Shown: positions 4,025 through 45,724 of the stretch, in pieces
Numbering within the stretch: position 1 is the stretch's first letter
Layout: the number at the start of each line of letters is the position of its first letter
From: Octopus sinensis
Taxonomy: Eukaryota
Direction: 5' to 3'
NCBI RefSeq assembly: GCF_006345805.1
Contig: NC_042998.1
Span: forward strand, 41,602,001-41,666,000
Length of the DNA: 64,000 nucleotides
Notes under the pieces: model-generated
What the model saw: only the letters and a program-made list of their open reading frames with translations
What the model was told of the DNA's origin: nothing
Database searches by the model: none
Translations under genes and position numbers: made by a program

Positions 4025-4747
4025 GTGAGTTCATCCAATTATTTTCTCATTTAATTTTCATCAGGCTATTATTTATACACTACGGTCACTTGACACACGT
4101 GTATGTATGAGTGTCGTTTATATTCTATTTATTTTCATATATAAAAATCTTTGTTTCGCGTGTCTTGTTTCCCCAAATGAAACAAGAAGTGATTCCTTTA
4201 GTAAACTTCCACATGCATCAGTTTTGGGAAAATCTGCGAATTTATTAATTCATTTATTTTTCCATAATTAAAAACTTACGTATCGTTTTCTTTCTTTCTT
4301 TTTCTTGAATGTTTATTCTTGAGGAAATATTCAACTTGTGGACAGACTGTATACAGTATATTTTAATTAACACTTGCTAAATGTTGACAATTTAACCACC
4401 AGCTTTTTAGTCCTTCGAACTGTTAGTAGCCAACGCAATCATAATTTTATTATTTGTTTTGTTAATATTGCACTCAATATTTTAGAAATATCTCTTTTAT
4501 TAAAATATGACAGTTAATCAATACAAACGCAAAATTTACAACACTGAAATATATACAATATCGCCTCCACCCTTCTCTACCTTTCTCTCTCCTTTTCTTT
4601 GACATTCTTTCAGCTGGTTTTATTTATTGAATGTTAGTATAAAACTAGCAAAAGATTTCATAATAAAATGTTATTTGATTGCATTTTCTTATTTCGGTTT
4701 CATAAACTAAACCAAGTAGATTGTAGTAGATACATTACCATTATCGA

Positions 4748-11987: not shown

Positions 11988-14108
11988 TCATCATCATCAT
12001 TGTTGTCGTTTAACGCCTGCTTTCTATGCTGATATGGGGTGGACGGTTTGACTGAGGACTGGCGAGCCAGAAGGCTGCACCAGGCTCCAATCTGATCTGG
12101 CAAAGTTTCTGCAGCTGGATGCTCTTCCTAATGCCTACCACACTGAAAGTGTAGTGGGTGCTTTTACGTGCTACCAGGGCCAGTCAGGTGGTACTGGCAA
12201 TGATCATGCTCAAAAGGTGTTTTACATGTGCTATTTGCACGGGAGCCAGTCCGGCAGCACTGGCAACAACCATGCTCAAATATTATTTTTCATGTGCCAG
12301 GAAGGCAATGATCATGCTTGGATGGTGCTTTTAACGTTCCACTGGCACGAGTTGCCAATCAGGTGGTACTGTTATCGGTCACGTCAGCGATTTTGATTTC
12401 ACTTGCCTCAACAGATCTTCGCAAGCAAAGTTTATTGTTCAGTGAATGAAGGGTACTCATAAGTGGGCTGGTTATACACCACTGGTATAGGCCACGGGTT
12501 ATGGTCTCACTTGGCTTGCTGGATCTTCTCAAGCACAGCATATCTCCAAAGGTCTCAGTCACTAGTCATTGCCTCGGTGAGGCCCAATGTTCAAAAGTCA
12601 TGCTTCACCACCTCATCCCAAGTCTTCCTGTGTCTACCTCTTCCACAGGTTCCCTCAACTGCTAGGGTATGGCACTTTTTCACACAGTTGTCCTCATCCA
12701 TTCACAACACGTGACCATACCAGCGCAGTCATTTCTCTTGTACATCACATCTGATGCTTCTTAAGTCCAACTTTTCTCTCAGGGCACTTACACTCTGTTG
12801 TGTATGCACACTGACATTACACATCCAGCGAGTATACTGGCTTCATTCCTTGCAAGCTTACGTATGTCCTCAGCAGTCACGGCCCATGTTTCACTGCCAT
12901 GTAGCATGGCTGTTTGTACACATGCGTCATACAGCCTACCTTTTACTCTGAGCAAGAGACCTTTTGTCACCAGCAGAGGTAGGAGCTCTCTGAACTTTGC
13001 CCAGGCTATTCTTATTCTAGCAGCTACACTTTCAAAGCATCTACCCCTGCTACTGACTCAGTCACCTAGGTAACAGAAGCTATCAACTACTTGTAGTTTT
13101 TCTCTCTGGAATGTAACAGAAGCTGTTCTTTGCACATTTTCAGTGTTTATTGCTCCTGAGCATTTGCCACATACAATAACTATCTTCACAGTTAGCCTTC
13201 CTTTAATATTGCTGCACCTCTTATGTGTCCATAGCTTACACTGGGTACATCTTATGGAGTTTCTACCTACGCCTTTTCTACAGACTGAGCAGGGTCATCT
13301 ACCTGAAGGGATTTGTGGTTTGTCTGCCTTCCTACTTATTAAGACTTTGGTTTTAGCTAGGTTGATTGTAAGGCCCTTTGATTCTAATCCTCACTTCCAC
13401 ACCTGAAACTTCTCCTCTAGTTCTGATAGTGATTCAGCAATTAGAGCAAGGTCATCAGCATAGAGGAGCTCCCAGGGGCATCCTGTCTTGAATTCCTCTG
13501 TTATTGCCTGGAGGACTATGATGAATAAGAGAGGGCTGAGGACTGATCCTTGGTGGACCCTACCCCTACCTGAAATTCTTCACTGTACTCATTGCCAACC
13601 TTCACCTTACTGACAGCATCCCTGTACATGGCTTGCACAGCTCTCAATAACCATTCATCTATCCCTAGTTTCCTCATTGACCACTGGATAAGCGATCAGG
13701 GGACCTTGTCAAAGGCTTTCTTCATGTCAACGAAAGCCAGGTACAGAGGTTTATCTTTGGCTAGGTATTTCTCTTACAGCTGTCTTACCAAAATATAGCA
13801 TTAGTGGTGCTTTCTCCTGGCACAAACCCCAACTGCATCTCATCTAGGCTGACACTCTCTTTCTAATTAGTTGGGTTATGACCCTCTCTAATTATTCGTA
13901 TATAATGCATCACCTTTACCTTTGTAACAGTTGACTATGGTGCTGCTACACCAGTCATTGGGTATGACTCCGTCACATATCACCTGGTTGACTATATGGG
14001 TGACTAAGCTATAGCTGACACTGCCAGATATTTTGAGCATCTCAGCGGTGATTCCTGATGGGCCGGGGGCTTTCCCTGTCTTCATACCCTTAATTGCTTT
14101 AACTACCA
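11988..14108 (-). mobile_element. 5'-truncated RTE (BovB-like) LINE with decayed reverse transcriptase
   Basis: Minus-strand peptides MKTGKAPGPSGITAEMLK, YLAFVDMKKAFDKVP, GVHQGSVLSPLLF, ELLYADDLAL and AMLHGSETW; frameshifts and stops; (CAT)n tail at 11988. Confidence 0.9.
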
Positions 14109-19989: not shown

Positions 19990-21129
19990 TTAGGTCGTCA
20001 AGTATGAAATTTGTAGTAAGGTATATAGTAAACTTTGACAGCTGCTCATTTTGCACCATTATTATATTTTGAATCTTTATTTTTTGTTAGAAAGCTGACA
20101 CGTCTATTTCTTTATTCTAACTCATTCATACAGTTTTGAAATATGAGTTCTTTCTTGGAAATGCATCACAAACAGCTCAGAATATTACTGGAGTATTTCA
20201 GACAGTATCAAATTGGTTTGCAAAATTTCGTTCTGGTAACTTTGACCTCACAAATGAGCAACACGGTCAACCAGAAACAAAGGTGGATAGTGACAAACTG
20301 AAAGCCACCATCGAGTCAGATCCATCTGAAAGTGCCTGTGAATTATCGTTGTTGTTTGGTGTTAGCAAGCAAATAATATTGACTCACCTAGTTCAAGTTG
20401 GTAAAGAGAAAAAGTTGGATAAGTGGGTTCTACATGAACACAATGAAAATCAGAAACAGCAATGCTACTTTCTTGTCACAAAAATGAATCATTTTTTTTA
20501 ATCGAATTGTAACGTGATGAGAAATGGATCCAGTACAACAACTGTAAACATTCAGCGCAATGGTTGGACAAAGACGAGCCACCAAAACACAGTCCAAAAA
20601 GCTAAATTCATCAAAAGAAGCTGATAGTGTGTGTTTGGTGGTCTGGTGCAGGTATGATCCATTATGATTTCTTAAACCTGGCTCATCAATCATGGCCGAA
20701 GTATACTGCAGCCAACTGGACCAATTGATGCAGAAACTTACCAAAGAACAGCCTAGATTAGTCAATAGATCCACTCCTATTTTATTGCAAGACAAAAATG
20801 ACATTGGTAAAACTACAGGAGCAGGAGTTGGAATTTCTCCATCATCCACCATACTCACATGATCTTGCCCCCACTGACTACCACTTCTTCCAGAATGTGG
20901 ATAACTTTTTGATAGGAAAAAAATTAATTTCAATGGTACTATAAAACAGGCCTTCCAAGATTTTATTGACTCTAGATTCCCAGGCTTTTACAGTTCTGGG
21001 CTGGACAAGCTACCACTGAAATGGCAAAAGTGTATTGACAATATATTTTGATGAGTAAAACTATTCCTTGTATTTATAAAAGATAAGAAAACTTTTTTTT
21101 TTCTACAAATTTCATACTTGACGACCTAA
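19990..21129 (+). mobile_element. Mariner (Tc1/mariner) transposon, full length by TIRs, transposase pseudogenised
   Basis: Perfect 27 bp TIRs TTAGGTCGTCAAGTATGAAATTTGTAG / CTACAAATTTCATACTTGACGACCTAA; TA on the left, CA on the right; peptides WFAKFRSGNFDL, KKLDKWVLHE, EKWIQYNN, KLIVCVWW; frameshifts. Confidence 0.92.
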
Positions 21130-30713: not shown

Positions 30714-32254
30714 ATGGCGACTGAGTGGCATAAGGTGGTCCAACCTAGTAGTAATCTGACTGTTGTCGATAATTCAAGTAAACAAACTACTGAAGATAAA
30801 CACTGTCAGAAAACGAAAGATAGTACGCAATGGGGGGTGCGAGTTTTCACCGATTTTTGCAATGAAGTTGGTTATAATGTGGAGTCTGCGACCCAAGATG
30901 TGTCATTATTATGTCAGGTATTGAAGCGATTATATGCTGGAGCGCGAACAAAAAAATGTGAACTTTATCAGCTCACAGCTTTCCGTTCTCTTCGTTATGC
31001 ACTCAAACGACACTTTGAGGAAACTCTCAATCTGGATATTATTAAAGGAGATGCTTTCGTCGAAGCGAACGAATCCTTTGTTTTTATGGAGAAGCGTATT
31101 AAAGCCGAGGGCAAAGGCCTGATACGACATTACCCTCCTGTCGAAGAGCAAGACATGGCTCGTTTAAAAGAATATTTTAAAGCAAACATGCAGAATCCAA
31201 CTCCACGGGAACTTTTGGAGTATGTTTGGTTTATTTTGCAATATTACATGTGCAGACTGGGAAGAGATGGACAGACAGAATTGAAGATAACTTCATTTGT
31301 TATTCGGACTGATGCTCAGGGAGAGCGGAGCATTGTTCAAAACGAATCTGAACCTCTGGATGGAAACGGGGAAAATGATGAGGAATTAGCTGGAGGGCTG
31401 ATACCATCGTTGAAAGGAGATGTGCTCTGTCCAGTGAGGGCATACGAGTTGTATATTTCTAAACTGCATCAGGATTTTGATAGACTTTTCCAAAAACCTA
31501 AAAAACTGGTTGATTCTAGTCAACCGTATTGGTTCGATCGCATTCCGTATGGTAAAACTCCTCTGGGTGGTATGATGCCTACGCTAAGCCACAAGGCAGG
31601 ACTGTCCAAACGTTACACTAACCACAGTCTGAGAGCTACGGCCATAGAGAAACTACTGTGGGGTGGCATAAACAGAAAAGATGTTCGTGCTATCAGTCAG
31701 TTATTCGGACAGCCAACATCTGTTTCACAGAGAAAGAAGATGGCATCTATTCTTAGTAACATTGCTGGAGAGCAAAGTACATCAGCAGTAGCAACACCCT
31801 TCTTGGAAGAGGCTCGATTAAATTCTAAGATCACCTCCAACAAAAGGGTAAATAATTTCAGAAATGAATTTCAACATCTCTCAAATAATTCTACTGCCTT
31901 ATCGCAGAAAAAGAATATTAATCTCCTCACTTCATCACCAATATCATCCCTAAATACTTCGTGTTTACCAAAATCTAACGCTACAAGGCCGCATCTTTCA
32001 ACAACCGGAGATTCCAGCGAAAAATCTGTCAATTGGAGAGAACAAGTTACAAACAGAAGACAACAGATAAGTTCCAGTGAGGCAAAAAACAACTTACGGT
32101 GTTTACAAAGTTTACATTTTGGAAGAGGGAGAGAATCGAAAGAAAAAAGTTCTAGCAGAATTGAAACTCAGGAAGAGAATCGTGTTGCCGACCAAAGTTC
32201 AGAGACATCCTCCTTTATGATTACAGATGTGCATTCTTGCGCCAACTCTTTCAC
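30714..32254 (+). CDS. Crypton-derived DUF3504 / tyrosine-recombinase-fold coding exon (513 codons + 2 nt; 514 aa if unspliced, stop at 32258)
   Basis: Crypton-type motifs KTKDSTQWGVRVF, LRYALKRH, YVWF..QYYMCRLGRD, CPVRAYELYISKL, W....P.GK..LG.MM and KRYTNHSLRAT. The ORF is intact and ends at AC|GTAAGC, a phase-2 donor. Confidence 0.88.
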
Positions 32255-34449
32255 GTAAGCATAACTTTTACACGATCGTCCCCAGTCTCAAGATTTTTTT
32301 TATATAGAACAATTCTTATATTTAAAAACAAGCTTTTTAATTTTCACACACGCATACACCATACATGCAATAAACACACACACACATATATATAATGTTT
32401 GTATGTCAAACCAAAATTATCGCACGTGTTTTCTGCGATGCATTCGGGTTCACCAATGTCATGGAGTGGAGGTTGGTAGTCGGAAACTGCAGAGGTCCGT
32501 CCTGTGTGTAATGTAGTGTTTGTGTTTATGTAATAATAATTCAGCTTTGTCACACGCTTATTTCGCTTGAGAAATACTTTAAAGATACATGTGTGTGTCT
32601 AATGTTTAGTGACTTTCACTTTAACAGTTGAATACATTTTATTGCAACTGACATTTATATATGTACGTGCGTGGTTGTGCTTTCCTTGAAGGGGTTCAAT
32701 GTTAACTTCTCGCTTGTATGTTTCACTTTGGGCCGGAGGGGTGGGGTACCTGCCCTTCTTATTACCAACCACTTTACAGAATGCATTGTGTGCATTTTTC
32801 GGGGCATCACAACTAAAGAGATTGGCATGTCCTCTCGACCCTGCGTTGTTTTGACTGGATGCATTTTATGATGGTACAGTTAGTTTGCTTCGTACCCCAT
32901 TAGTACTTACTACTTTATGGTGTGTTCATTCACTCACGATGTAATGAAGGTGCATTACAAAGGGTAAATTTTGACAAACTTGTCCAAATTTACCTTTAAA
33001 AAGTGAAAGAGAAGGGGTACTGATTGTCTGATCAGTTGTCAATGTGTTCTTTATTTTTCTGTGTATAAAGAGAATAATCATCATCATCATCGTGTTCATC
33101 AATATCTGTTTAAAAGTCCTACAACAACAAAAAAAAAGCCCTCAAAAACAATGGTTAAACTACTTTAAGTTTATCTGTTACTTCAACGTACGGCTGACAA
33201 TACAGTTAGTCTAGCCTTTACATATAAATTCTATTTGTGTTTAATTTAAATAGCAATTTACTGTAAGTTCTTTTTGTGGGCAGAAGAATAATGGGGTACT
33301 TGCCCATCAAATGAGTGGTTAACAAACTGTGGAACATGTCAGGACAATCTCCTTTATTATTCTGTGTACTTGAAGAATAAAAAAATATATTCACCACAGC
33401 AAAAAGCTTAAAAACTGAAGTTTGTCTACTTTAAATTTATCATAGGTTTTCTAATCATACACTGCTTAAATATTTATATCTACACCAGCGATGCTGGTAT
33501 GGATTGGTGGTCAGTATGGTTCAAGTTAGCACATTTGAGGGTGCTGCTAATGTAGTTGGGCTGGAAGACTATATGTCACTTGTGGGTTTCATTCTCAGCT
33601 TGGTTTCTATGGCCAGATGCCCTTCCTTGTTCCAGCTACTTTGCAGTATTGCAAGTTCCAAGTAATTTGCAGAAAAAAGTATTGAGTATTTTTTTCAAAG
33701 CATCAGTGCTTCAGAGGTAGCTATGTCTATGACATGACTGAAGAAACCTCTTGACTCCATGACTTCTTGCTCATGAACCTGTTTATAGAGTGGGAAGCAT
33801 TAAGGATAAGATAAACAGAGGTATGGATGATAGTCATAAGAATGGTACTCAGTATTCTGAAGCAAGTATGTACAATCAGTGAATTGTGAGCAAGAGAATA
33901 GAGCAGTAACAGTGGCAAGATGATCCATGTGCTTGAGAGAGAGAGAGCGATAGCAAGGATATGTGGGTGAAAATAAGTAAGAGTATAATGGCAGGTAGAG
34001 TGAACAAGAAGAGGGAAAGATGAAGATTAGAGTAAAGTGTACTGGACACAACAGGTCCAATGTTGTGTGGTCTCCTAAAGATGGGTTAACAAATGGTGAG
34101 TATGGTAGTTAGTGGGGGCCCATACAAATAGGCAGATAAGGATGATGGGAGAGGTCCCATTCATATGAATGGCTAGGGATGTCAGAGAAGTGAAATAATG
34201 TCACAGTACAGAAAAAAAACAGTGATAGTCAACTAGGCTGTAAATATACCTACATACCCATGCAAACGGATACACATAAAATGTATACCTCTCAGTCTAC
34301 ATCATTACCATTATCCTTGTGAATTTCAATTTGTCATGCTTACATTGCTGAATAGAGGTTTTCTCCAACACTGCATATCACCAATCAACACTGTCCTTTG
34401 TCATCTCTTGCATAAGGTTTCACACAATTTCCATCTACAAAATATCACT

Positions 34450-34813
34450 CAGTGGCACTCCGTTGGTTATGACGAGAATTCCAGTTGATCTGATCAATGG
34501 AACAGTCTGCTCATGAAATTAACATGTAAGTGGTTGAGTACTCCACAGGCACGTGTACCCATAACATAGTTCTTGGGGAGATTCAGCGTGACAAGGCTGG
34601 CCCTTTGAAATATAGGTACAACAGAAACAGGTTGAAAGAGCAAGAGAAAGTTGTGGTGAAAGAGTACAGCAGGATTTGCCACCACCCCCTGCTGGAGCCT
34701 CGTGGAGATTTAGGTGCTTTTGCTCAATAAATACAACACCCAGTCTGGGAATCAAATCCTCAATCCTACGACCGCGAGTCTGCTACCCTAACCACTGGGC
34801 CATTGTGCCTCCA
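34450..34813 (-). mobile_element. tRNA-headed SINE, family C
   Basis: Minus-strand head gtggaggcacaatggcccagtggttagggtagcagactcgcggtcgtaggattgaggatttgattcccagac. Confidence 0.75.
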
Positions 34814-35514
34814 CATCATTCAATAGACATTCAGTAAACCAAGACTGAAGTAAAAGACACCAACTTAAAAGTGTTGAACTCAAAATCACATGATTAAAAA
34901 GCAAATTTCATAACCTAAAGGTTATATATATAATTTTATACATGAATATTTTTATATATCTTTTTTTAAGTTTATTTGTGTGCATATGTATAAGTGTGCT
35001 GAAAACATTTTGCTGGGACTCTAGACTAGTAACATCAAAGTTCTTGTAAGTTAGTGGCCATGGAGAGGATGTGGGCAGGACATCACACATTTCTATGACA
35101 ATGAAATACTGTCACTTGTGTAGTTTCCTCACTTACCAAAGCATATGGAAAGTATAGTTTATATATGTGACTATACTTCTATTTTTGTTTGTGTATGTGT
35201 ACTATTATTCTCAACCTTTATTACAATTTTTTCATCCTCTTGTGTTCTACACAATTCTATTTTTACCCTATTTGAATTATTCTTTCCGAAGCAAGTAGTA
35301 GTTACTGGTTAGACATTTTATGTCCTTTAATAACTATTCATTAGCTAACCCTAATTCTAAAATATGTCTATCTTTGATCTCTGTTAAACTCTGTTACACT
35401 TCCAGTATTACCGATACTGTTTCTCTCTCTAAGTCATGTACACTTTCACCCAGGTATATATATATACACACATATATAAATAATGTGGATTTTTTATACT
35501 TCCTTTATTTTTCA

Positions 35515-36388
35515 AAATTAAGATAAAGTTCTTTTTTAATCTAAAATATATACTCTCCTTCATTTTTTACAATGCTCTTCCATCTATCTGGTAGACTTGC
35601 AAGGCCCTTCTTCCAAAATTCACTTGTCTGTGACAAAAATACTCCTCCAGTACTGTTCTGACCTCGTCTACAGAGTTCATGTTTTTTCAGTCCAAATGAT
35701 TTTGGAAACTGTGGAATAAATGATAATCAGATGGGACAATGTCTGGCAAATATGGTTGGTGGGGCATCGTTTCCCATTCAAACTGCTCCATCCTTTAGAA
35801 TGTCGTCCTTTTTGTATGTAGCCGAGCATTATCCTGATGGAAGAACACCTTTCATCTTGAAACCAAAGATGGTTGCTTTTCTTCTAGCGCTGACTTGAAT
35901 GACTGGTTGAATGACCAAATCCAAGCTTCTCTGCTAGTTCAACAACAGTTATGATGGAATTCTGTTCCACCAGAGTTTGCAGGAAGTCCTTGTTGAGCTC
36001 TACAGATCTTCCAGGACAAGGGTCATCTTCGAGGCTATAGTTTCCAGCTTGGATTTTCTGGAACCATCATTGAAACTGGCTTATGCTTATTGTCTAATCC
36101 CCATATACTGCATTAATAATTCCTTGCACTTTCCATTGCATTGTTGCCTTTATTGAACTCATAAAGCAAAATATGCTGAATATGCTCCTTTGCCACTTCC
36201 AGTATAGCTTTGAAAAAATAACTGTTAAAATTGAACAGCACTCTTCAAAAGTTGAACTAAGAATAAGGTCAAGTTAAATTTACTACCTGCTTTTATAGCA
36301 AGTTGATGCAGGTAGTTTATCCTGTCTCCCTCTGACTTTTAGTTCATGCAACTGAGAAAACCGCTATTCTTTATGGGATGACCCAATA
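35515..36388 (-). mobile_element. Mariner transposon (second family), decayed
   Basis: TIR-like ttgggtcatcccataaag; minus-strand MEVAKEHIQHILLYEFNKGNNAMESAR; 3' part matches the reverse complement of 57150-57470. Confidence 0.8.
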
Positions 36389-37944
36389 TATATATATTTC
36401 TTGCACCTGTAGACAGCTCTTCAATGATTTCAGTGAATCCCTACACTCTTAGTAATCTTGCAAATTTGCAATCAACAATTGAGCTGCTACAAAGACAACT
36501 CACCTAGTAGTTTTGTTCACTCGGAATTGTATGTAACTGCTGCATAATTAAAGGCTTTGACTACAGTAAGTCAGCTTCTGTAATAGAACAAACAGACCTG
36601 TGCTGAAACATTTTTGGGGTCATAGGCTTAATAAAAGGGTACACTAGTTCCTGAGTGCATTAAGTGTAGTTGTTTTCGTTGCAAAGTCCAGATATTCAGG
36701 TTTGTGGATGGTACCAATATCTTGATGCGCAACTTCCAACTGCATCTTCCATTGTGTAGTGCTACTTCATTACTGCATGTGTACATGTTGAAAAGGTTTT
36801 CCAGTGGGCTGTCACTAGATACCATAGGAAGCTGAAAATTTGATTATTATATAGGGAAGCTGCCCTATCATATGGCACATAGTCATATATTTTCTTCACA
36901 ATTTGGAACCTGTGCTCAACTAGTTAAGTAGTTTTGAGTGACTTTCTTCATTGACCACTAAATCAGTTCTTCTTCAATCTTGCCAGTTGAGAAACCTCTG
37001 CAAATGTCCTAGGCAATGCTAATACTCCTATGATTAGCTTATAGAAAAGTAACTGCAATATTACATCATACAATATACATGCTCAACAGATTTTCACAAA
37101 ATTAGCTTTTACAAACCACACAAAAAACAAACTTGCAGAATGTCAGGTATGTCTTCTGTCTGAAACATGACTCTGTTGCATTCCTTTTAAAAGACATACA
37201 AAGTATCTTGTTTGTCTCTCATTTTTCAAGATGATTTATACTTCACCTCTTAGACACTATAATCTCTACATCATTGATAACCCTTTGTACTTCTTTTGCT
37301 TTTAATCACGTAGCCATGGATTTTATGCATATACCTAGCATTTCACTATCTTTTAAAAATTTAGAAGGACACTTAAATAATGCAGCCCTAAATACACTAT
37401 GTCTGGAAAAGATGTGATGGTCACAATGGAGTGCTTTTAATCATAGATATGCTGGATCAGAACTGACCCAGATAAACAACAACAATTATATAATGAAAGC
37501 AAATCCTGTCCTGTCTGTTTAAGCTTATCCTTCACCTGTTAACATTTTTAGTCCTTAATAACGCATTAGTGACTAAAAACTTTCCAAAATCTACTGTCTT
37601 GGCCACTTTAGACATATCTTTAGGACTAAACTAAATGGGTTGCAAAGGGATTACAACTCTCTCACACTGATCAAGGCTACTTCACTCATAGAATTCTCAA
37701 CAAAATCTCTATACGTATATAATTGGCATACTAGTTATAACATGGGAAATTTTCTCAGAGTTGTCTTCTGTATGCAAAAAAGCATAACTAGGGATTAACA
37801 TAATGTAGTGAACCTAAAAAGAAATGTTAAATCAATTAAAATTAAAAATTACGCTGAAGAAAATCATTAGTGTGAAGAATAATAATTATTGTGAAAGGCA
37901 AGGAAGACAACTCTGGAGTCCAAATTTGTTGAAAATTGTATCAT

Positions 37945-38320
37945 CTTGTACTTGTTTCAGTCTTTGAACTGTGGCCATGCTGGGCTACTCCTTTGAAGGG
38001 TTTAGTCAAGCAAATCGACCCCAGTACTTATTTTAAGCCTGTTACTTATTCTGTTGAACCCTTTTTGCCAAACAGCTAAGTTATGGTGACATAAACAAAC
38101 CAACACCAGTTGTCAAGCAGTGGTGGGGAACAAACAAAAACACAAAAGCACACACATGCGCAACAGGCTTCTTTCAGTTTCCATCTATGAAATCCACTCA
38201 CAAGGTTTTGGTTGTTCTGGAGTTATTGTGGAAAATACTTGCATAAGGTGCCACACAATGGGATTGAACCCAAGACCATATGATTAAGAAACAAGCCTCT
38301 TCTCACACTGTTACACTGCA
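37945..38320 (-). mobile_element. SINE family A copy
   Basis: Reverse complement of family A (ttcagtttccatctatgaaatccactcacaagg; aaggtgccacacaatgggattgaaccc). Confidence 0.75.
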
Positions 38321-38589
38321 CCTATAGTTTGATCTTAGGTACATACAGTGACAACTCCAGAAATGTTTTGATCTTAACAGGTTTCCTTAGCTGACCATAG
38401 TCTTACAGGCCTTAAAACGAATGTGAAAATATATAGAAACAAACACGCTATAATGTAGTTCTGCATCATGCTCAAACATTTGAACAGATATCTGTTATAA
38501 TGCAGTTACTAGTGCTTCATAGAAATCTGCAATTACTATCCAATATTAACACCAACTTACAAATACTTAGGCTAATGTTTAAAGCACTT

Positions 38590-40960
38590 CACTTGGTTAA
38601 CCCTTTTCAAGCAGGTTGTTGAGTGTAGTTTGTTGTTCAACAGACCTTTAATCAAAGACATTGCAACTAATGCATTTTCAGACAGGAGAATATAATCTGA
38701 CAGGAATTTGCCTACTATATCTAGCAGGCTTAATTACTGTGTAGCTGCTCAGTTAGATTATTGGTTATTGGTTAAACAACAAAGTGCAATATAAAGATCT
38801 ATTGCTCTAGATATCCTCACCTCTGCCTAAAAGATGACCGCAGAGTGATCTCGGCCATATTTGATTGTTGATGTTGTTTAACCTCAGGTCAGCCTTGACC
38901 ATGCATACTCATGTATGACTGAAAGTATTGCAGCCATGATTCATTATCATTATTTAACACCCGTATTCCATGCTGGATGGTTTGACAGGATCTGACTAGC
39001 CTGAGAGTTGCATTGGTCTCCAATGTCATCTGTGACAAGGTTTTTGTGATTAGATGCCCTTCTTAATACCAACCACTTTACAGAGTGCAATGCCTCATCT
39101 TTTGCATATCTAAGACTGCATTATCCAGTGTATCTGGAAGAGTGTAATCTGAGCTACTTTTGTAGCAGGTTGAAACAACCAAGTAGTCACCCTTTAATTG
39201 TATAGGATGTTCTGTGGGAGTCTTGGTTCAGTCTGTTATTTGTATACCTGTTATTGTTGTTTAACCCTAGGTCTACTTTGACCAGATAGATGTATAGCTG
39301 AATGCATTCCAACTATGACGATCCCACCTTTTTTCATACATATTATAGCTAAGACTCTATTATCCAAATGTGTCCCGTTTGTTAAGCTGATAAAGTATTT
39401 GTTGGATATGTGGCTACTATTTCTAGTAGGTCAATAAATTGTGTAGAGGTTTCCTATTAATCCAATGTTTCTTGTTTCATGTTAGAGCCAACATTTTAAA
39501 AATTTCTTTTCTCATATGGAATTGAATTGTTTGTTAATATGTGAATATAAAGAAATAAGTCAAATGCTTTGCTTCTATTGATAATAGTTATATAGTGTCT
39601 GAAAGGACTCTTTCATTGCAGAAGCCATCATGTATTCCTTGAATAAGATTTGTGAATTATTGTGGTTGAGTGAAGTTATCTGAATTCTTTTTGCAAGTTT
39701 CAAAGAGGAATATGTGAGTTGGTGATATCAAACATAAGTCCTCTTCAGGGATTTTGAAGGCGTGTATGTGAGTGTTGAGTCCCTGTAATGCTGGGGGGGG
39801 GGGGGGGGGTTCAGTTGAATTTTTAATATAAATTTGCTTTTTTTGTGATTTATCATAGGTACATATTTTTAACAGCTTTCTTTTCTCTGGTTCATTTTCT
39901 ATTTAATTTCTCAATGAAATTTAATTCTGTTATGTATGGTATTAGTGTTTTGTTTAAGGTGGTTGTTCCTGGTTTTTTATCAAGCTGACTATGTCACTTG
40001 GGTAATTTGGATTTTATGTTTTTACGCATTTTTGTGGGATGAATGCATGGAATGAATTATCTATGTTTATGTATCATTGTGTCTTGCAATGTGATTGCCA
40101 TTCTGTTTTAAGGAATTTTCTGTCAGGTATAGGCAACCTATTTTGAGAAGCAGACTACATGAGATGTTCATCATCAGGTGGGTCACACTACTAAAAAGAC
40201 TGAAGGTAATTTTTCATTTAGGTGTGCCATTCAGAAAGCCCTATAGGCTGTAGTTTGCCCATGACTACTCTATGATTACTTGACCTGGTAAAAATAACAG
40301 CCTAATTTCTTCCAAACTACATCCTGTTGTCTTTAGAAGTGGGTTACCCTGGATAATACAATCATGGATTGTATTATCTACTGGAAAAAGAGATGGGTTG
40401 GTTTCAGCTGAAATACCTTCAGAATGATGGTCATGAAAGTAAAACTTAGTTGTGCCCTTAAAAGTCTCTGTATGTTCTAAAACTGTTATTTGGAATGGGT
40501 GCAATCTCTTCAATTGTTACTATAACTAAATTAGGATGTGGCTAGTTTATTCTTTGCAAGCATTAGTTACATTATCATCTCATTTAGGCAATTATACAGC
40601 TACTGGATAGTCTAAAGAAAACTAATTAAATGCCAGGTCCTGGTATTTGTAAGCCTTAATTATTTGAATTAATAAATCTAGATTTAGGGTAATGTTAAGT
40701 GTCTGAAGTTGTTTTGCTGGGTTAAATAACTTTTTGTTTATTGAATTTGTGATACGATTATTACAGACAGATGCAGGGTCCATTCAGAAAGGTGAATAAG
40801 TGTTGTTTTAACCCCAGATTATCCCTGAATGAGTAGACCTCTATTCAAAGCTGTTCCATCTATGATCAACCTATTTTTATTCAGACATAATGTATCTAAA
40901 ACTACATTGACTTGTGTCTTTCCTCTTTTTAAGAAGTGAGAGATTTCACTGCCATTTCTT
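38590..40960. repeat. Cluster of old unclassified short repeats (gttgtttaaccc(c/t)aggtc... family) around a decayed retroelement-like segment (about 39580-40700, possibly Penelope-like)
   Basis: Related motifs at about 38590, 38870, 39255 and 40800. The minus-strand remnant peptides are only weakly suggestive. Confidence 0.35.
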
Positions 40961-42310
40961 GTAGGCTCGACAACAAATGGTAGTGAACAATTTTAAAGCT
41001 GATCTAAGTTATTGAGACAGGTTTGACAGTATGTTTATTAGATTATTCAATGATTTTCTTCTGTAATTTACTAATATAACATTTGTTATCATATTTTTTT
41101 TTCTTCACTTGCAAGATCTTTCATGTCCATGTACTTCTCATTTTGAAAATTGGAACAGTTGAATAAGGTTACTTAAGTAATCAGTTACTGTTACATAGCA
41201 TTTGCAGAAATATGCAACCATGTTTTACTTCTGTTGGCATAACATTTAAAAGTGAAATCAAAACATTTTATTTCATACATCATGAGCGGTATGGTCACTG
41301 CGAATCTATACATATTTCTATCTATAAAAGTGAATGCAGTGTTTCTGTCTGGAGTCCTAAGCTCTTACTTTACCTATTTCCCCCTATTTTTGCTTGCTAT
41401 TGGAGCAAGCTTTTTGATTTATGGTAGCATTATGTTGTAAAATATTGTTGACAGAATTTTATATTAAATGCTATTAAATGTAAATTTCACTATTCATATA
41501 TATTATGTGCTTATATATGTGCATGCACATATACACACAACAGTTATGCATGTGTGTGTGTGTGTGTGTGTGTGTGTTTGTGTGTATATATAAATAAAAG
41601 AAAACATAGAAGTGATAGTTTCTTTATATAAAAGTCTTTGAATTTTCTTAAAGAAATGAAATATTACTTAAATTCTTTTAGAATGTTTGTTTTGTCTAGC
41701 AATGTAGAGTCAGTTTCTGTTTTCATAACACACACATATGAGAGAGGGAGAGATTTCTGTGAATACATTTCATTAATGTTCTGTAACTTTAACATTTGTT
41801 TTTTAACATGGTATTGCTTTACACATTATATTATATGTTTATTTATTTCTCTGTGACATACACACCAGAAAAAGGTATAAAAGATGTTGTTCTGCTCTGG
41901 GATGATAAAATTTGGTAGAATGTAGCAGAATAATGTATGATATAATTGTCTTTAGTGTGATGATTTTCAAATAAGTGACGTAGCACTCATCTCATCTGAA
42001 TTGTTTCTAAAGCTGGATTGATGAATAATGTTGCAATTGAGTTTTACTTCATGTTATAAGCCTCTTCATTTTTATTTTGAGCATTTTGTGGTGGCAGTTA
42101 TTGTAAAAATGAGACCTGACTACAAAATAAGCTAGGTGAGGGTATCAGTGGAGGTATCAGTTACTACCCTTCAGCTATGTTTGGTGCAAATATTTGTGAC
42201 TACTAAAATGTTGACAATTGAATTGCAATATTTTAATTTATTTTTAATGTTTTTGTCAATTTATATCCAACATCCATCATGTATTATATTTCATTTCTCT
42301 TTATGTACAG

Positions 42311-42473
42311 TGAGCAGAATACACCAACAACGTTTATGAAAACAGTTGAAAACCCTACTCATTCATATGTTGTGCACAAACATCAAGGCCACATGCTCTC
42401 CAATATGACCAATCTTTGGAAAAAAGGTAAACTCTGTGATGCTTCCATTGGAAATGGAACAATGAAAATTATG
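42311..42473 (+). CDS. Shared BTB exon A (EQNTPTTFMKTVENP...LCDASIGNGTMKIM); internal ATG at 42336
   Basis: Pyrimidine tract and CAG acceptor at 42310. Only a phase-2 entry is open; phases 0 and 1 hit TGA. Donor ATG|GTAAGT at 42474. Encodes the N-terminal BTB motif H...L.NL...G.LCD. Confidence 0.88.
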
Positions 42474-42989
42474 GTAAGTATTAAATATCAAATCATGATT
42501 ATCTAACTCTGTATCTATTCATGTACACTTGTTTTTCTTTATTATTTAAGTATTTTCCTTTAGTATGTTAATATCAGCTGCTAATCCAAATCATGAGCAC
42601 AGACATTATAGCACATAAGTATTTTAAAGCCAATTTTCCCTGCTAAAATAGGGGTTAACTTAATGGTTCCACTGACAGTCTACATTATTAATATGAGATA
42701 ACAAATATGGGACAAATGACAGATCTCTTCAAGGTGAAGGCCCTGCTTGACATGTAGAAATGCTGTTGGGAGAAACTCCAAATGGTGTACTCAGTGCAAG
42801 TTTTGGACACATAAGAGCTGCAGTAACATCGCTGGAAAATTAACAGAGACAGTAGTCTTTACACGTGGCTAATGTGCAAGTACATTAAACACTAGGAATG
42901 TTAAAAAAAATAGACTCCCTCAAATGTCGGGGTGATCCTTAGAAGTAGTTAACAGTTTCTGTTACTTAGGTGAGGTTGTTCTGAAAACA

Positions 42990-43770
42990 TAGCTGCTAGA
43001 ATAAGAATGCACTGGGTAAAGTTCAGAGATCTGCTACTCTGTTAGTAATGAAGGGTCTCTCTCTCAGAGTAAAAGGCAGATTGTATGATGCCTGTGCATG
43101 AACATTTATGCTACATAGCAGTGAGACATGAGCTGTGACTATTGAGGACATGTGAAGGCATGAAAAAAATGAAGCCAGATGGGTAATGTCAGTGTGCATA
43201 TACGACTGAGTATAAGTGATTTGAGAGAAAAACTGGGTATACAAGGCATCACGTGTAGTGTACAAGAGAGAAGACTGCAATGGTACGTTCATGTAATGCT
43301 TATAAATGCAGGTAGATGCATCAAGAAATGCTGATCTCTTATTGTGAAGGGGTAGACCCAAGAAGACATGGGATGAAGTGGTAAAAAAGGATCTTCAAAC
43401 GTTGTATCTTACAGAGGAGACAACAGGGAACTGAAACTTCTAGTGATTTGCTTTGCTTGAGAAGACACATGAAGCTAAGTAAAATTGTGTTTGTCCTTGC
43501 ATACAGGCATGACCTCTGGATCCCTTTTCAGCTGAGTGATCCTAATCTTGCTGGCTCATGGGTGCTGGTGCCACATAAAAAGCACCTATGCCAGTACCAT
43601 GTAAAAGCACCCAGTACACTCTGTGAAATGGTTGGCATTAGAAAGGGCATCCAGCTGTAGAAACCATACAACAACAGACATGGAGCTCGGGCAACTCTTC
43701 AGCTGGCTAGCACCTGTTAAACCATCCAACCCATGCCAGCAAGGAAAACAGATGTTAAAAGATAATGATA
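42990..43770 (+). mobile_element. RTE LINE 3' fragment including 3' UTR
   Basis: ggtctctctctcagagtaaaaggcagattgtatgatgcc (GLSLRVKGRLYDA), gggtagacccaagaagacatggg, tail ccaacccatgccagca. Confidence 0.8.
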
Positions 43771-44743
43771 TATCATATTGGTACTTTGTAACATTGGAGT
43801 CCACAATGTGAAGTGGGTAAAAGAAAAATTAAATGTAATGAAAACAATCAAAATTGGAAAATTGAAATTGATAATAATGTATTTTAAATCACTTGCATTT
43901 GCCAAACAAGCCAATGAATTGTTTTCAGTGTAATCAACAACAGATTTGTTTGAAATTATGAATATTGTTTATGATACCTGAAATCTCATGGGCTCTTTGA
44001 CTGGTTAAGAAAAAAAGTAAAAGAAAGATAACTAAAACTAAACCATGCAAACAAAGAGACAACTATGTATGTGTATATATCATCATTGTTTCAATGTCTA
44101 CTTTTCCGTGCTTTCATGGGTCAGACAGAGTTTATTGAGGTAGATTTTCTATGGCCAGATGTCCTTCCTGCTGCCAACCCTTACTTGTTTCTAAGCTTGG
44201 TAATATTTCAATATAGCCAGACGTGTTTCCACAGAATATTGAAAATAAAGGACATTCATTTACAGCAATCACGCAATGTCATGACATGAAGACACAAGTT
44301 TACAGACATATACGTGTGTATGTATGCATGTATGCACATACATTAATACATAATTTTTATTATTTTTTTTGTGAGGCAGATTCTCAACATACCTTGTGTT
44401 AGAAGTATATAGAGTCCTGTGTTTCTAGCCTATGTAAGTTAAGAGCAAATATATGAAGAAATGTAATATTGTGATTATTCATGATCATGTACTATTTATT
44501 GGAATACAAAGGATTATTCATCTCCTCTTTTCTTCCTAAATTATAAAATAGTTTCCTAATTTCCTAAGTCAATAATGTGTTAATGTTTCCAATCAAAGAA
44601 ATGTGTTATGTCTCTGTACACAAAATATATTTTTAAATAATATATTTTTGCAGGGTTTGGGGTTCAGTTAGGCTTTTAATGTGATTCTTTGAAATATTCT
44701 GCTTTTATTGTTTTTCTATAAATATGTGTTCTTTCTTTTCTAG

Positions 44744-45724
44744 GTTCACAAAGTTGTGTTGATTGCTCTTAGTCCACAACTTTTAACATTGCCAAATGCC
44801 ACTGTAACATCAGGTTGTTTCCAGTTGACATTTTCTCAGGATATTGGTGGTGATGCTTTATGGGCATTTGCTAAATATATGTATGAAGGTGTTGTCTCCC
44901 TTAATGAGGAGGTATTGGAGGATATGGAGCATATTGCAAAAATCCTTGGTTTAAGTGATCTATTAGATATGTGTAAACTTTATCGGAAACAGGTTTTGAG
45001 TTCTATTGACAATCCTGTCACAACTAAGGCCTTAATCTCTCAACCAACTGAATCTCCAGGCATTATTAGGGATGCCATTTCAACAGAGATTGTTAATACA
45101 ATGGATACAATGCCTAAAACTGATGGCCCATCTTTATCAACTGGTGTATCTTTCATGGGTTTACCCAATAGTGATATTACTCCATCAATCTCGAAACCAG
45201 TGCAACAGTTACAGAACTTAGCTACAGAATCAATGACAAATCAAATACAGTTCCAAACAAAACAATCAGTTCCTCCGGTGATCCTTTATTCAGCTGATAA
45301 AGACTCTTCAGTTTCAGGCTATGCCAATGATTCTGTAGGATTAAAACAAGAACCATCAAGTCCTTTGAAAAAAAGGTGCAGTAAAAAAGATTTCTTATCT
45401 TCTTTCCCTTCAAGACACTCAGACACACATATTGTTGTCCACGATGATTTATCAGAACCTTGGCAACCACATTCTTACTGTGATAATGAAGACCCAAAAA
45501 GTCCTCCACCTCCAAAGCGTCTAAAATCTTCAGAACTACCTGAAGATTCTTTATCTAATTTATCTCACTCAAATACTGAAGATTTCAGTCCTCACACTAA
45601 AAGTGCCAAAGACTCTTATCCTATCAAAATTGAACTTGAACGAGACAGTAACAGTGATTTAGAAACTTCTGGGATTCCTTATGTTGTGTCGTTAATTCAA
45701 GCCAAAGGCCTGGACACTACTTGA
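44744..45724 (+). CDS. Shared BTB exon B, terminal coding exon (VHKVVLIALSP...GLDTT*, 326 aa)
   Basis: ttctttcttttctag acceptor, phase 0. BTB core VHKVVL..SP...YMYEG...IAKILGL..L..MC, followed by a Ser/Pro-rich tail. No zinc fingers. Confidence 0.9.
   Translation, partial: VHKVVLIALSPQLLTLPNATVTSGCFQLTFSQDIGGDALWAFAKYMYEGVVSLNEEVLEDMEHIAKILGLSDLLDMCKLYRKQVLSSIDNPVTTKALISQPTESPGIIRDAISTEIVNTMDTMPKTDGPSLSTGVSFMGLPNSDITPSISKPVQQLQNLATESMTNQIQFQTKQSVPPVILYSADKDSSVSGYANDSVGLKQEPSSPLKKRCSKKDFLSSFPSRHSDTHIVVHDDLSEPWQPHSYCDNEDPKSPPPPKRLKSSELPEDSLSNLSHSNTEDFSPHTKSAKDSYPIKIELERDSNSDLETSGIPYVVSLIQAKGLDTT

What the first reader, a model, noticed from the sequence alone, without database searches (positions are those of the whole stretch)
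30714..32254. Domesticated, apparently catalytically dead Crypton tyrosine recombinase joined to BTB; possible convergence with vertebrate KCTD1
Seen: an intact 514-codon ORF, whereas the other recognisable transposon ORFs in the window are broken. It keeps the H-x-x-R motif (H304-S-L-R307, 31623-31634). The segment that normally carries the second His and the nucleophilic Tyr is collapsed to ISQLFGQP, and there is no Tyr anywhere after Y301. The Arg expected in the x-R-G-x-[DE] box appears as Leu (C180-R-L-G-R-D); that alignment is from memory. Known background: DUF3504 genes domesticated from Cryptons include KCTD1, KIAA1958, QRICH1 and ZMYM2/3/4, and long KCTD1 fuses DUF3504 to a KCTD-type BTB. 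Inference: a mollusc lineage independently coupled a dead Crypton recombinase fold to a ZBTB/Kelch-type BTB, probably as a DNA- or chromatin-binding regulator.
Basis: partly seen in the sequence, partly recalled or inferred. Interest (0 to 1): 0.75.

Follow-up and report, generated by a model that had tools for sequence, protein, structure and literature searches.

The report
Dead Crypton recombinase fused to BTB
This octopus gene is a former "Crypton" jumping-gene enzyme that lost its DNA-cutting residues, was spliced onto a BTB dimerisation domain, and has been kept under strong selection across octopuses and cuttlefish; it is a new, independent example of a known kind of transposon domestication.

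Summary
Window 30714..32258 (+) is a 514-codon ORF. It is the first coding exon of Octopus sinensis LOC115230799, and the spliced 894-aa product is identical to XP_029656788.1.

The ORF encodes a complete two-lobed tyrosine-recombinase fold of the Crypton/DUF3504 type. Only 2 of the 6 catalytic residues remain (L-D-H-R-gap-F instead of R-K-H-R-H-Y).

The BTB is not inside the stated interval. It lies in two exons 10-13 kb downstream (42311-42473 and 44744-45724), joined through a donor that overlaps the ORF's stop codon.

- **Fusion is real:** intronless contigs from seven runs (two documented as Sepia esculenta larval RNA-seq) carry the uninterrupted fusion ORF.
- **Domestication:** each octopus record shows one copy at a colinear locus. 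The recombinase-like part has 17 synonymous and 0 non-synonymous differences between two octopus species. It is 84% identical between octopus and decapodiforms.
- **Not KCTD1:** the BTB is ZBTB/KLHL-type, the recombinase part is 28% identical to a KCTD1 long-isoform protein, and different catalytic residues were lost.

New here: cephalopods hold further DUF3504-BTB genes whose BTBs are related to this one. At least one of them carries a recombinase part from a different Crypton lineage.

The function, probably a dimeric DNA- or chromatin-bound regulator, is inferred and not shown.

The parts
30714..32254 (+). Coding exon 1. It carries what looks like a whole intronless Crypton-type ORF, residues 1-513 plus two bases of codon 514.
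   Evidence: ORF. tblastn of XP_014776313 residues 1-514 gives 98% identity. The spliced model equals XP_029656788.1 exactly.
30801..31118 (+). N-terminal helical lobe of the recombinase-like fold (residues 30-135). It corresponds to the core-binding domain of tyrosine recombinases.
   Evidence: The AF2 model has helices 32-131 at pLDDT >90. Foldseek aligns both lobes to Cre over about 340 columns.
31146..31766 (+). Catalytic-domain-like lobe (residues 145-351), containing the DUF3504 match.
   Evidence: Pfam PF12012 covers residues 161-291. The profile matches QRICH1 at E=2e-23 and XerA at E=6e-7.
31251..31268 (+). Degenerate box I, C-R-L-G-R-D. The catalytic Arg is replaced by Leu182.
   Evidence: The column is Arg in 126 of 142 relatives and Leu in all orthologues of this gene.
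31623..31634 (+). Retained H-x-x-R (H304-S-L-R307) inside the near-invariant Y-T-N-H-S-L-R motif.
   Evidence: It aligns to H-V-L-R of XerA.
31692..31715 (+). Collapsed His/Tyr segment ISQLFGQP. It has an 8-residue deletion that removes the third His, and the nucleophile Tyr column holds Phe331.
   Evidence: Decapodiform orthologues have SQRRSDSGLENYGH here.
31767..32213 (+). Fast-evolving Ser/Thr/Asn/Gln-rich linker (residues 352-500). It is mostly low-confidence in the model.
   Evidence: AF2 pLDDT is mostly below 50 for residues 352-540, with one moderate-confidence helix at 361-393. It is 17-24% identical between octopus and decapodiforms, with dN/dS of 0.35-0.46.
32214..32254 (+). Conserved exon-end peptide FMITDVHSCANSFT (residues 501-514).
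   Evidence: It is 12 of 14 identical between octopus and decapodiforms and 14 of 14 within each group.
32255..32260 (+). 5' splice site GTAAGC. The in-frame TAA stop of the ORF (32256-32258) lies inside it.
   Evidence: The same TTCAC|GTAAGCA is found in the cuttlefish and in a second decapodiform. The junction is used in the cuttlefish mRNA.
32255..42310 (+). Intron 1 (10,056 bp).
   Evidence: It is colinear with the O. bimaculoides intron at 88-96% identity.
42311..42473 (+). Coding exon 2 (residues 514-568). It holds a short linker and the start of the BTB, which begins at about 42411.
   Evidence: The acceptor is a polypyrimidine tract followed by CAG, and the donor is GTAAGT.
42474..44743 (+). 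Intron 2. It splits the BTB between KIM and VHK, in phase 0.
44744..45724 (+). Coding exon 3. It holds the rest of the BTB (to about 44989), a low-confidence acidic tail with LKQEP/IKIE, PPPPKRLK and the terminal PYVVSLI motif, and the TGA stop.
   Evidence: Pfam BTB PF00651 matches at E=3e-9 for residues 548-650. Tail motifs are shared with paralogues.

Best explanation
This is a host gene, O. sinensis LOC115230799, with orthologues in Octopus, Argonauta, cuttlefish and a second decapodiform. Its first coding exon is a domesticated CryptonA-type tyrosine-recombinase ORF.

How the gene is built:
- The ORF keeps the whole two-lobed DNA-clamp fold but has lost catalysis. The box-I Arg is Leu, the beta-hairpin Lys is gone, and the third His is gone. 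In Octopus the Tyr segment is deleted and the Tyr column holds Phe. Only H-x-x-R remains.
- The 5' splice site sits on the ORF's own stop codon (AC|GTAAGC). Splicing joins the recombinase-like module, through a low-confidence linker, to a ZBTB/KLHL-type BTB/POZ domain and an acidic tail encoded 10-13 kb downstream.

Inferred origin: a Crypton landed upstream of a BTB gene and was exonised before octopodiforms and decapodiforms split. This is the same route proposed for vertebrate KCTD1 isoform b, taken independently.

Inferred mechanism, not shown:
- The basic recombinase-derived clamp (pI 9.0) still binds DNA or a DNA-bound partner without cutting it.
- The BTB dimerises two such clamps, echoing the paired binding of real recombinases, and may recruit co-regulators.
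- The protein would therefore act as a nuclear transcription or chromatin regulator.
For: **Gene model and identity**
- Searches give canonical splice sites, and the product equals XP_029656788.1.

**Fusion is transcribed**
- Seven intronless contigs from seven runs hold one uninterrupted 903-aa DUF3504-BTB ORF.
- One of them is 100% identical to the genomic contig on both sides of a 1,862-bp GT..AG gap, exactly at AC|GT.
- Two of the runs are S. esculenta larval RNA-seq.

**Recombinase origin**
- Pfam DUF3504.
- 3,366 relatives at E<=1e-3, mostly 300-500-aa Crypton-like ORFs.
- 87 of 142 non-redundant relatives keep all six catalytic residues.
- AF2 pLDDT 86.4; Foldseek gives QRICH1 at E=3e-8 and Cre at about 1e-6 with TM 0.5.
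- The profile hits XerA and maps HxxR, His and Tyr.

**Dead site**
-.

**Domestication**
- The locus is colinear between two octopuses.
- There is one contig per genome record.
- The recombinase-like part shows 17 synonymous and 0 non-synonymous changes (p=3.6e-12). The BTB has dN/dS 0.03, and dS is about equal to intron divergence.
- The decapodiform pair gives dN/dS 0.036, and octopus against decapodiform is 84% identical while dS is saturated.

**BTB class**
-.

**Not KCTD1**
-, plus Kojima & Jurka 2011 (PMC3212892).

**Regulator inference**
- The recombinase-like module has pI 9.0.
- The best structural match is QRICH1 in a complex solved bound to ZFP91 on DNA (PDB entry title).
- The QRICH1-SEPHS1 complex is described as a zinc-finger co-regulator (PMC13538652).
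- Other DUF3504 genes are transcriptional regulators (PMC3212892).
Against: - No experiment or binding data exist, so DNA binding, dimerisation and nuclear location are all inferred.
- The BTB in the full-length AF2 model has low confidence (pLDDT 36-84) because the alignment is shallow. The BTB assignment therefore rests on sequence.
- Transcript evidence comes from the cuttlefish orthologue, not from octopus itself.
- Single-copy status rests on database records and this window, not on a whole-genome scan.
- The DUF3504 Pfam score is borderline: 31.3 bits for the ORF, but 28.9 bits for the full O. bimaculoides protein, against a 29.7 cut-off.
- The timing of the insertion is bounded only by the taxa that happened to be in the databases.
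Confidence: 0.8

Rival explanations
1. The ORF is a live or recently dead Crypton transposon copy, and the 894-aa protein is an annotation chimera that wrongly joins it to an unrelated downstream BTB gene.
For: The ORF is intronless and has about the size and layout of free Crypton ORFs. The BTB lies 10 kb away. Chimeric predictions do occur among the relatives, for example P0009 and P0091.
Against: - Four of six catalytic residues are lost.
- Spliced cuttlefish contigs, two from documented RNA-seq runs, use exactly this junction.
- The donor and exon-end peptide are conserved in three lineages.
- dN/dS is about 0.
- The locus is orthologous and colinear, and exons 2 and 3 lie downstream in decapodiform genomic contigs too.
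Confidence: 0.03
2. The gene is the cephalopod orthologue of vertebrate KCTD1 long isoform, meaning one ancient DUF3504-BTB fusion rather than convergence.
For: The domain order is the same, and in both genes the DUF3504 part sits in a single 5' exon. In the NJ tree this gene and the KCTD1b-like P0205 fall in a clade of 15 or fewer taxa, but in only 20% of bootstraps.
Against: - The BTB is PF00651 and is nearest to ZBTB17, KLHL3 and gigaxonin. No KCTD hit appears at E<=0.01.
- Recombinase-part identity to P0205 is 28%, rank 119 of 148.
- The losses differ: here box-I Arg is lost and the second Arg kept, while P0205 keeps box-I Arg and has lost the second Arg.
- KCTD1b is reported to arise after the vertebrate KCTD1/KCTD15 duplication (PMC3212892).
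Confidence: 0.03
3. Same origin, different job: the BTB recruits CUL3, and the dead recombinase fold is a substrate- or DNA-recognition module of a ubiquitin-ligase adaptor, rather than a transcriptional regulator.
For: KLHL3 and gigaxonin, both CUL3 adaptors by established knowledge, are among the best BTB matches at E=5e-7 and 5e-6.
Against: - No BACK or 3-box, Kelch or MATH domain was detected.
- ZBTB17 matches equally well.
- Other DUF3504 host genes are transcription or chromatin regulators.
Confidence: 0.15
4. On the origin of the family: there was one ancestral Crypton-BTB fusion followed by gene duplication. The recombinase parts of the paralogues look unrelated only because this gene's copy evolved fast after losing catalysis (a long-branch effect).
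For: - All four fused proteins share the order DUF3504, linker, BTB, tail.
- Their BTBs are related to each other at 63-97 bits, against 34 bits for the best solved BTB.
- They share the tail motifs IKxEP and PYPVSLV.
- Deep nodes of the NJ tree are weak.
Against: - The recombinase part of the cuttlefish paralogue P0062 is 45-49% identical to intact free Cryptons (P0156, P0137, P0166, P0180) but 27% to this gene. It groups with them, excluding this gene, in 99% of bootstraps.
- It shares their signatures RATG, PAQIM and EKxxMG, whereas this gene carries the signatures of the P0004/P0066 type.
- The four fused proteins are never monophyletic (0 of 200 bootstraps).
- Exon 1 ends at different places: residue 514 here and about residue 402 in P0062.
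Confidence: 0.3
5. The protein is a repressor of Crypton transposons. It would bind Crypton ends through its ancestral specificity and silence them through BTB-recruited co-repressors.
For: Relatives include KRAB-DUF3504 and THAP-KRAB-DUF3504 fusions (P0106, P0113), an architecture typical of repressors.
Against: The recombinase-like part is 84% conserved across the deep octopus-decapodiform split, with dN/dS near 0. That fits a fixed host target better than an arms race. No intact Crypton was seen in this window.
Confidence: 0.1

Closest known systems
KCTD1 long isoform (KCTD1b), jawed vertebrates
   Same: Both have an N-terminal catalytically dead Crypton recombinase (DUF3504) held in a single 5' exon and spliced to downstream BTB exons. 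Both retain the His of HxxR. The proposed origin is a Crypton insertion upstream of a BTB gene (PMC3212892).
   Different: - The BTB class differs: KCTD/T1-type there, PF00651 ZBTB/KLHL-type here.
- The recombinase parts are 28% identical.
- Different catalytic residues were lost.
- The host lineages differ.
QRICH1 (Zincore subunit) and WOC/ZMYM2-4, KIAA1958
   Same: All are domesticated, inactive DUF3504 domains in host regulators. QRICH1 is the best structural match (9hjt_H, E=3e-8) and the best sequence match (E=2e-23).
   Different: Those proteins carry MYM zinc fingers, CARD or Gln-rich regions and no BTB. According to PMC3212892 they lost both the conserved His and the second Arg, whereas this gene keeps HxxR.
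CryptonA transposon tyrosine recombinases
   Same: The fold, length, N-terminal offset and intronless ORF are the same. Identity to free copies such as P0066 and P0004 is 33-36%.
   Different: Free copies keep R-K-H-R-H-Y (87 of 142) and end in an FxNCx[IF] C-terminal motif. This gene has neither, is single-copy and is spliced to a BTB.
ZBTB and KLHL BTB/POZ proteins (ZBTB17/Miz-1, KLHL3, gigaxonin)
   Same: The BTB domain type is the same, and the match includes the N-terminal extension (query residue 9 aligns to chain residue 9 of ZBTB17).
   Different: There are no C2H2 fingers and no BACK or Kelch domains. The partner module is a recombinase-derived fold.
Cre, XerA and other solved tyrosine recombinases
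   Same: The two-lobed clamp is aligned over about 340 columns to Cre at TM 0.5, and the HxxR motif is aligned to XerA.
   Different: Sequence identity is 11-17%, and the nucleophile and three other catalytic residues are missing.

Membership tests
DUF3504 / Crypton-derived recombinase domain (Pfam PF12012) | Match to PF12012 at or above the gathering score | tested here: met
   The window ORF scores 31.3 bits against the 29.7 cut-off. This is borderline: the full O. bimaculoides protein scores 28.9 bits, so databases may not annotate it.
DUF3504 / Crypton-derived recombinase domain (Pfam PF12012) | Two-lobed tyrosine-recombinase fold | tested here: met
   AF2 pLDDT is 86.4 and pTM 0.76. Foldseek gives QRICH1 at E=3e-8 and Cre at E about 1e-6 with TM 0.5 over about 340 columns.
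DUF3504 / Crypton-derived recombinase domain (Pfam PF12012) | Nearest relatives are Crypton-type recombinase ORFs | tested here: met
   153 representatives have E<=1e-30, mostly 300-500-aa ORFs with DUF3504 and Phage_integrase hits.
Active tyrosine recombinase / autonomous Crypton | Complete catalytic set R-K-H-R-H/W-Y | tested here: not met
   The window protein has L-D-H-R-(deleted)-F, and decapodiform orthologues have L-N-H-R-R-Y.
Active tyrosine recombinase / autonomous Crypton | Multiple dispersed near-identical copies | tested here: not met
   There is one hit in the window. The 90% cluster holds one contig per octopus genome record. No other sequence above 50% identity appears among the representatives apart from orthologue fragments. 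A whole-genome scan was not possible.
Domesticated (host) gene | Orthologous position across species | tested here: met
   The window is colinear with O. bimaculoides CM046602.1 over about 35 kb. The same three-exon layout is seen in two decapodiform genomic contigs.
Domesticated (host) gene | Purifying selection on the transposon-derived part | tested here: met
   There are 17 synonymous and 0 non-synonymous differences (Fisher p=3.6e-12), and dN/dS is 0.036 in decapodiforms.
Domesticated (host) gene | Expressed as a spliced host transcript | tested here: met
   This was shown for the Sepia esculenta orthologue. It was not tested for octopus.
KCTD1 long isoform | KCTD/T1-type BTB (PF02214) | tested here: not met
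   Only PF00651 is reported at E<=0.01. No KCTD chain is among the PDB hits at E<=0.01.
KCTD1 long isoform | Recombinase part groups with KCTD1b | tested here: inconclusive
   Identity to P0205 is 28%, rank 119 of 148. A small shared NJ clade appears in 20% of bootstraps. No ML tree was possible.
ZBTB transcription factors / KLHL adaptors | BTB/POZ domain of PF00651 type | tested here: met
   E=3e-9, 37.5 bits against a 20.5 cut-off. Best PDB hits are ZBTB17 and KLHL3.
ZBTB transcription factors / KLHL adaptors | C2H2 zinc fingers (ZBTB) or BACK plus Kelch repeats (KLHL) | tested here: not met
   No such Pfam hit is found in the 894-aa protein.

The most novel reading that the evidence does not exclude
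One cephalopod (and possibly wider) family of BTB genes has captured Crypton recombinase ORFs more than once, from different Crypton lineages, as its first coding exon. If so, a dead recombinase clamp plus a BTB dimeriser is a repeatedly selected design, seen again in vertebrate KCTD1b.

Supporting points:
- The BTBs of this gene, of the cuttlefish paralogue P0062, of the octopus paralogue LOC115220336 (P0076) and of P0063 from an unidentified organism are each other's relatives. They score 63-97 bits against each other, versus 34 bits for any solved BTB.
- The recombinase part of P0062 sits with intact free Cryptons at 99% bootstrap and away from this gene.
Probability: 0.45. Interest if true: 0.65.

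Novelty: new member of a known kind. Interest (0 to 1): 0.5.

Why it matters
Crypton domestication is so far described mainly from vertebrate and bilaterian-wide genes (KCTD1, KIAA1958, WOC/ZMYM, QRICH1). What DUF3504 does is only beginning to be understood through QRICH1/Zincore.

A separate, strongly constrained DUF3504-BTB gene in coleoid cephalopods gives an independent replicate of the KCTD1b architecture. It uses a different BTB class and lost a different set of catalytic residues. That helps show which features of the dead recombinase fold are functionally required: the retained TNHxxR motif, the two-lobed clamp and the helix after the former Tyr.

The decapodiform copies (Tyr kept) and the Octopus copies (Tyr segment deleted) form a natural series of active-site decay under constant purifying selection.

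If the recurrent-capture reading holds, it would be a clear case of convergent domain pairing driven by transposon exonisation.

In practice, public databases label the gene only as an uncharacterised or BTB-domain protein. Its transposon origin sits at the edge of Pfam detection.

Tried and rejected
1. **Crypton C-terminus at the exon end.** I tested whether the conserved exon-1 end FMITDVHSCANSFT is the remnant of the Crypton C-terminal FxNCx[IF]x[IF] motif, which is present in 66 of 138 free copies. The best PSSM hit in the protein does fall at residue 503. However, 417 of 500 shuffles score as well, and the HMM E-value is about 1. Rejected as unsupported.
2. **BTB relatives outside cephalopods.** A search with the BTB and tail alone found only cephalopod orthologues. 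No ancestral BTB-only host gene was identified.
3. **Named vertebrate relatives.** A profile search returned 38 proteins and no named KCTD1, KIAA1958 or ZMYM. A KCTD1b representative (P0205) was recognised later, through its match to solved KCTD1.
4. **Full-length structure.** The full-length AF2 model gave a poor BTB (pLDDT 36-84) and low-confidence linker and tail. I did not use it for a fold search.
5. **Source of P0063.** I could not identify the organism behind P0063 (runs SRR27666064, SRR27666071, SRR27666076). No paper cites these runs. Its GC3 of 0.50, against 0.31-0.32 in cephalopod orthologues, suggests only that it is not a cephalopod.
6. **Paralogue loci.** The genomic locus of the octopus paralogue P0076 is not on record. 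The P0062-type locus L019 shows exon 1, but its BTB exons lie beyond the 10-kb flank.
7. **Other scans.** Rfam and a tandem-repeat scan of 11-18.5 kb found nothing.
8. **PDB sequence search.** The single protein gave no PDB hit. Only the profile and the fold search did.
Full report
**What is in the sequence**

Window 30714..32258 (+) is an ATG-to-TAA ORF of 514 codons. It is the longest ORF in the 64-kb window. The runner-up, 44756..45724 at 322 aa, belongs to the same gene.

- HSLR is residues 304-307, at 31623-31634.
- CRLGRD is residues 180-185.
- ISQLFGQP is residues 327-334.
- The last Tyr is Y301.

Pfam reports DUF3504 (PF12012) at E=2.6e-7, 31.3 bits against a gathering score of 29.7. 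No BTB lies in the ORF itself.

**Gene model**

The ORF is 98% identical to the first 514 residues of O. bimaculoides XP_014776313.1, an 894-aa protein with a BTB. tblastn places the remaining residues at 42306-42476 and 44744-45721.

Reading the junctions gives a CDS of 30714..32254, 42311..42473 and 44744..45724. The donors are GTAAGC and GTAAGT, and the acceptors are polypyrimidine-AG.

The spliced product is identical to O. sinensis XP_029656788.1, LOC115230799 isoform X1. The window is therefore O. sinensis or a near-identical genome.

The first donor overlaps the ORF's stop: the sequence ...TTC AC|G TAA GC. The BTB (PF00651, E=3e-9, residues 548-650) is split by intron 2.

**Is the fusion real?**

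- In a cuttlefish, genomic contigs L002-L009 carry the exon-1 ORF ending in the same TTCAC|GTAAGCA. The exon-2 homologue lies 1.86 kb downstream.
- Seven intronless contigs from seven runs (L010-L016) carry one uninterrupted 903-aa ORF spanning DUF3504 and BTB.
- L010 is 100% identical to genomic L002 up to the donor and resumes at the acceptor. It skips 1,862 bp bounded by GT..AG.
- Two of the runs, SRR25097171 and SRR25097172, are Sepia esculenta larval RNA-seq (PMC10571815).
- A second decapodiform genomic contig (L001, ENA ERZ21867824) has exons 2 and 3 downstream as well.
- An Argonauta hians protein (GAB1597306.1) covers the BTB half at 69% identity.

The fusion is transcribed in the cuttlefish, and the exon layout is shared by octopodiforms and decapodiforms.

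**Recombinase origin and fold**

An exhaustive HMMER scan found 3,366 relatives at E<=1e-3 and 153 at E<=1e-30. Most are 300-500-aa proteins about 30-36% identical over residues 20-340. Those checked carry DUF3504, Phage_integrase or QRICH1-domain Pfam hits.

An AF2 model of residues 1-360 (40-sequence alignment, pLDDT 86.4, pTM 0.76) shows an N-terminal helical lobe and an alpha/beta lobe. Foldseek against the PDB gives these matches:

| Match | E-value | Note |
|---|---|---|
| QRICH1 in the Zincore-ZFP91-DNA complex (9hjt_H) | 3e-8 | best hit |
| Cre-lox structures (about 25) | about 1e-6 | TM about 0.5, about 340 columns |
| XerA, IntI4, XerH, Flp | weaker | |

The family profile hits QRICH1 at E=2e-23 and XerA at E=6e-7. 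It aligns YTNHSLRATA...SGHxS...Y with XerA TPHVLRHTFAT...LGHAS...QIY, which anchors the catalytic columns to a solved enzyme.

**Active site**

In a 142-sequence non-redundant alignment, 87 relatives keep all six of R, K, H, R, H and Y.

| Protein | Six catalytic columns |
|---|---|
| Free relatives (87 of 142) | R, K, H, R, H, Y |
| Window protein | L182, D, H304, R307, deleted, F331 |
| Decapodiform orthologues | L, N, H, R, R, Y |

The decapodiform orthologues keep the segment and the Tyr (SQRRSDSGLENY). The three Octopus sequences examined share an 8-residue deletion plus Phe in the Tyr column.

**Domestication tests**

- **Locus:** the window and the O. bimaculoides locus (L017, CM046602.1) are colinear over about 35 kb. 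Intron identity is 88-96%.
- **Octopus pair:** for residues 1-345 there are 17 synonymous and 0 non-synonymous differences (dS 0.08; Fisher p=3.6e-12). The linker has dN/dS 0.46, the BTB 0.03 and the tail 0.16.
- **Decapodiform pair:** between the two decapodiforms the recombinase-like part has dN/dS 0.036 and 97% identity.
- **Octopus against decapodiform:** the recombinase-like part is 84% identical although dS is saturated. The linker is only 17-24% identical.
- **Copy number:** database clusters show one contig per octopus genome record, and no further sequences above 50% identity apart from orthologue fragments.

This is the signature of a host gene, not of a decaying transposon.

**Relation to KCTD1**

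Kojima & Jurka (PMC3212892) describe KCTD1 isoform b as a Crypton inserted upstream of KCTD1 in early jawed vertebrates. In that gene DUF3504 sits in one exon, Tyr and the second Arg are lost, and His is kept.

One hit, P0205, carries DUF3504 followed by a stretch matching solved KCTD1 (9foi_A) at E=9e-18, so it serves as a KCTD1b representative. Its catalytic columns read R, P, H, G, H, P, as the paper describes.

- The octopus recombinase-like part is 28% identical to it, rank 119 of 148.
- A small shared NJ clade appears in only 20% of bootstraps.
- The octopus BTB matches ZBTB17, KLHL3, gigaxonin and ZBTB18, and no KCTD at E<=0.01.

The architecture is therefore convergent and not orthologous. 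A related source Crypton lineage cannot be excluded with an NJ tree.

**A family, and possibly repeated capture**

The exhaustive scan also found other proteins with DUF3504 plus a PF00651 BTB:
- P0076, which is O. sinensis LOC115220336, O. bimaculoides LOC106879774 and an O. vulgaris entry.
- P0062, a cuttlefish protein seen in many contigs of about 3-4.6 kb.
- P0063, from an unidentified organism with GC3 of 0.50 against 0.31-0.32 in cephalopods.

Their BTBs score 97, 78 and 63 bits against this gene's BTB, compared with 34 bits for the best solved BTB. They share the tail motifs IKxEP and PYPVSLV.

Their recombinase parts do not group together:
- P0062 is 45-49% identical to intact free Cryptons (P0156, P0137, P0166, P0180) and 27% to this gene.
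- It joins those free Cryptons, excluding this gene, in 99% of 200 NJ bootstraps.
- The four fused proteins are never monophyletic.

Either related BTB genes captured Cryptons more than once, or a recombinase exon was replaced. The alternative is a single fusion blurred by long-branch effects. I give that alternative about 0.3.

**Mechanism (inferred)**

- The recombinase-like module is basic (pI 9.0) and keeps both lobes of the DNA clamp.
- It keeps the near-invariant TNHxxR motif and the conserved helix after the former Tyr.
- The linker and tail are mostly low-confidence in the model.
- ZBTB-type BTBs are dimerisation modules (established knowledge).
- Known DUF3504 host proteins are transcription or chromatin regulators (PMC3212892). 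The QRICH1-SEPHS1 complex is described as a zinc-finger co-regulator and was solved bound to ZFP91 on DNA (entry title).

I therefore favour a dimeric, non-catalytic DNA- or chromatin-bound regulator. A CUL3 adaptor and a Crypton repressor are the rival functions.

**Novelty**

I found no paper on a cephalopod DUF3504-BTB gene. Databases call it uncharacterised or "BTB domain-containing". Domesticated Crypton recombinases fused to host domains are a known kind, and other fusions were seen among the hits: KRAB, THAP-KRAB, C2H2 and ATF7IP. This is a new member of that kind, with a possible recurrent-capture twist.

Noticed in passing
window 3530-4054 (+): A 174-aa ORF with a THAP domain (E=1.7e-11). 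In O. bimaculoides a THAP-domain gene is also called upstream of the orthologous locus (L017 1-2472). By colinearity, however, that one maps to about window 20.5-23 kb, so the two may be different THAP genes or copies.
   Followed up: partly
window ~12000-14100 (-): A G+C-rich island (0.41-0.51 against about 0.30-0.34 around it) holds short minus-strand ORFs with peptides that, from my own recognition and with no search run, resemble non-LTR retrotransposon reverse transcriptase (KAPGPSGITAEMLK, LYDACVQTAMLHGSETWAV).
   Followed up: partly
window 20136-20501 (+): A 121-aa ORF has a weak match to the Mos1/mariner transposase HTH (PF17906, E=9e-4, below the cut-off). It is probably a mariner-like remnant.
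   Followed up: no
L001 16513-16515: In the second decapodiform genomic contig, the exon-3 homologue changes reading frame between 16513 and 16515. This is either a one-base assembly indel or a real lesion or extra intron.
   Followed up: no
relatives P0106, P0113, P0095, P0118/P0176, P0069/P0088 (one search hits): Other host-domain fusions of DUF3504 appear among the closest relatives: KRAB-DUF3504, THAP-KRAB-DUF3504, DUF3504-C2H2, ATF7IP-DUF3504, and DUF3504 with a MYM zinc finger in scorpion and spider proteins. Recombinase exonisation seems frequent.
   Followed up: partly
relatives P0009 and P0091: These look like chimeric gene predictions that join a Crypton-like recombinase to unrelated domains: ADAM/reprolysin in a Ruditapes philippinarum protein, and a DDE_Tnp_4 transposase in P0091.
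   Followed up: no
free Crypton-like proteins: About half of the free 330-560-aa relatives (66 of 138) end in a conserved C-terminal motif, roughly F-x-N-C-x-[IVF]-x-[IF]-x-[FY], within the last 15 residues or so. I do not know a described function for it.
   Followed up: partly
L018/L020/L021 (runs SRR27666064, SRR27666076, SRR27666071): Intronless contigs from an unidentified organism (CDS GC3 of 0.50) encode a DUF3504-BTB protein with the same tail motifs. Its recombinase part pairs with the KCTD1b-like P0205 in 70% of NJ bootstraps. The family may extend beyond cephalopods.
   Followed up: partly
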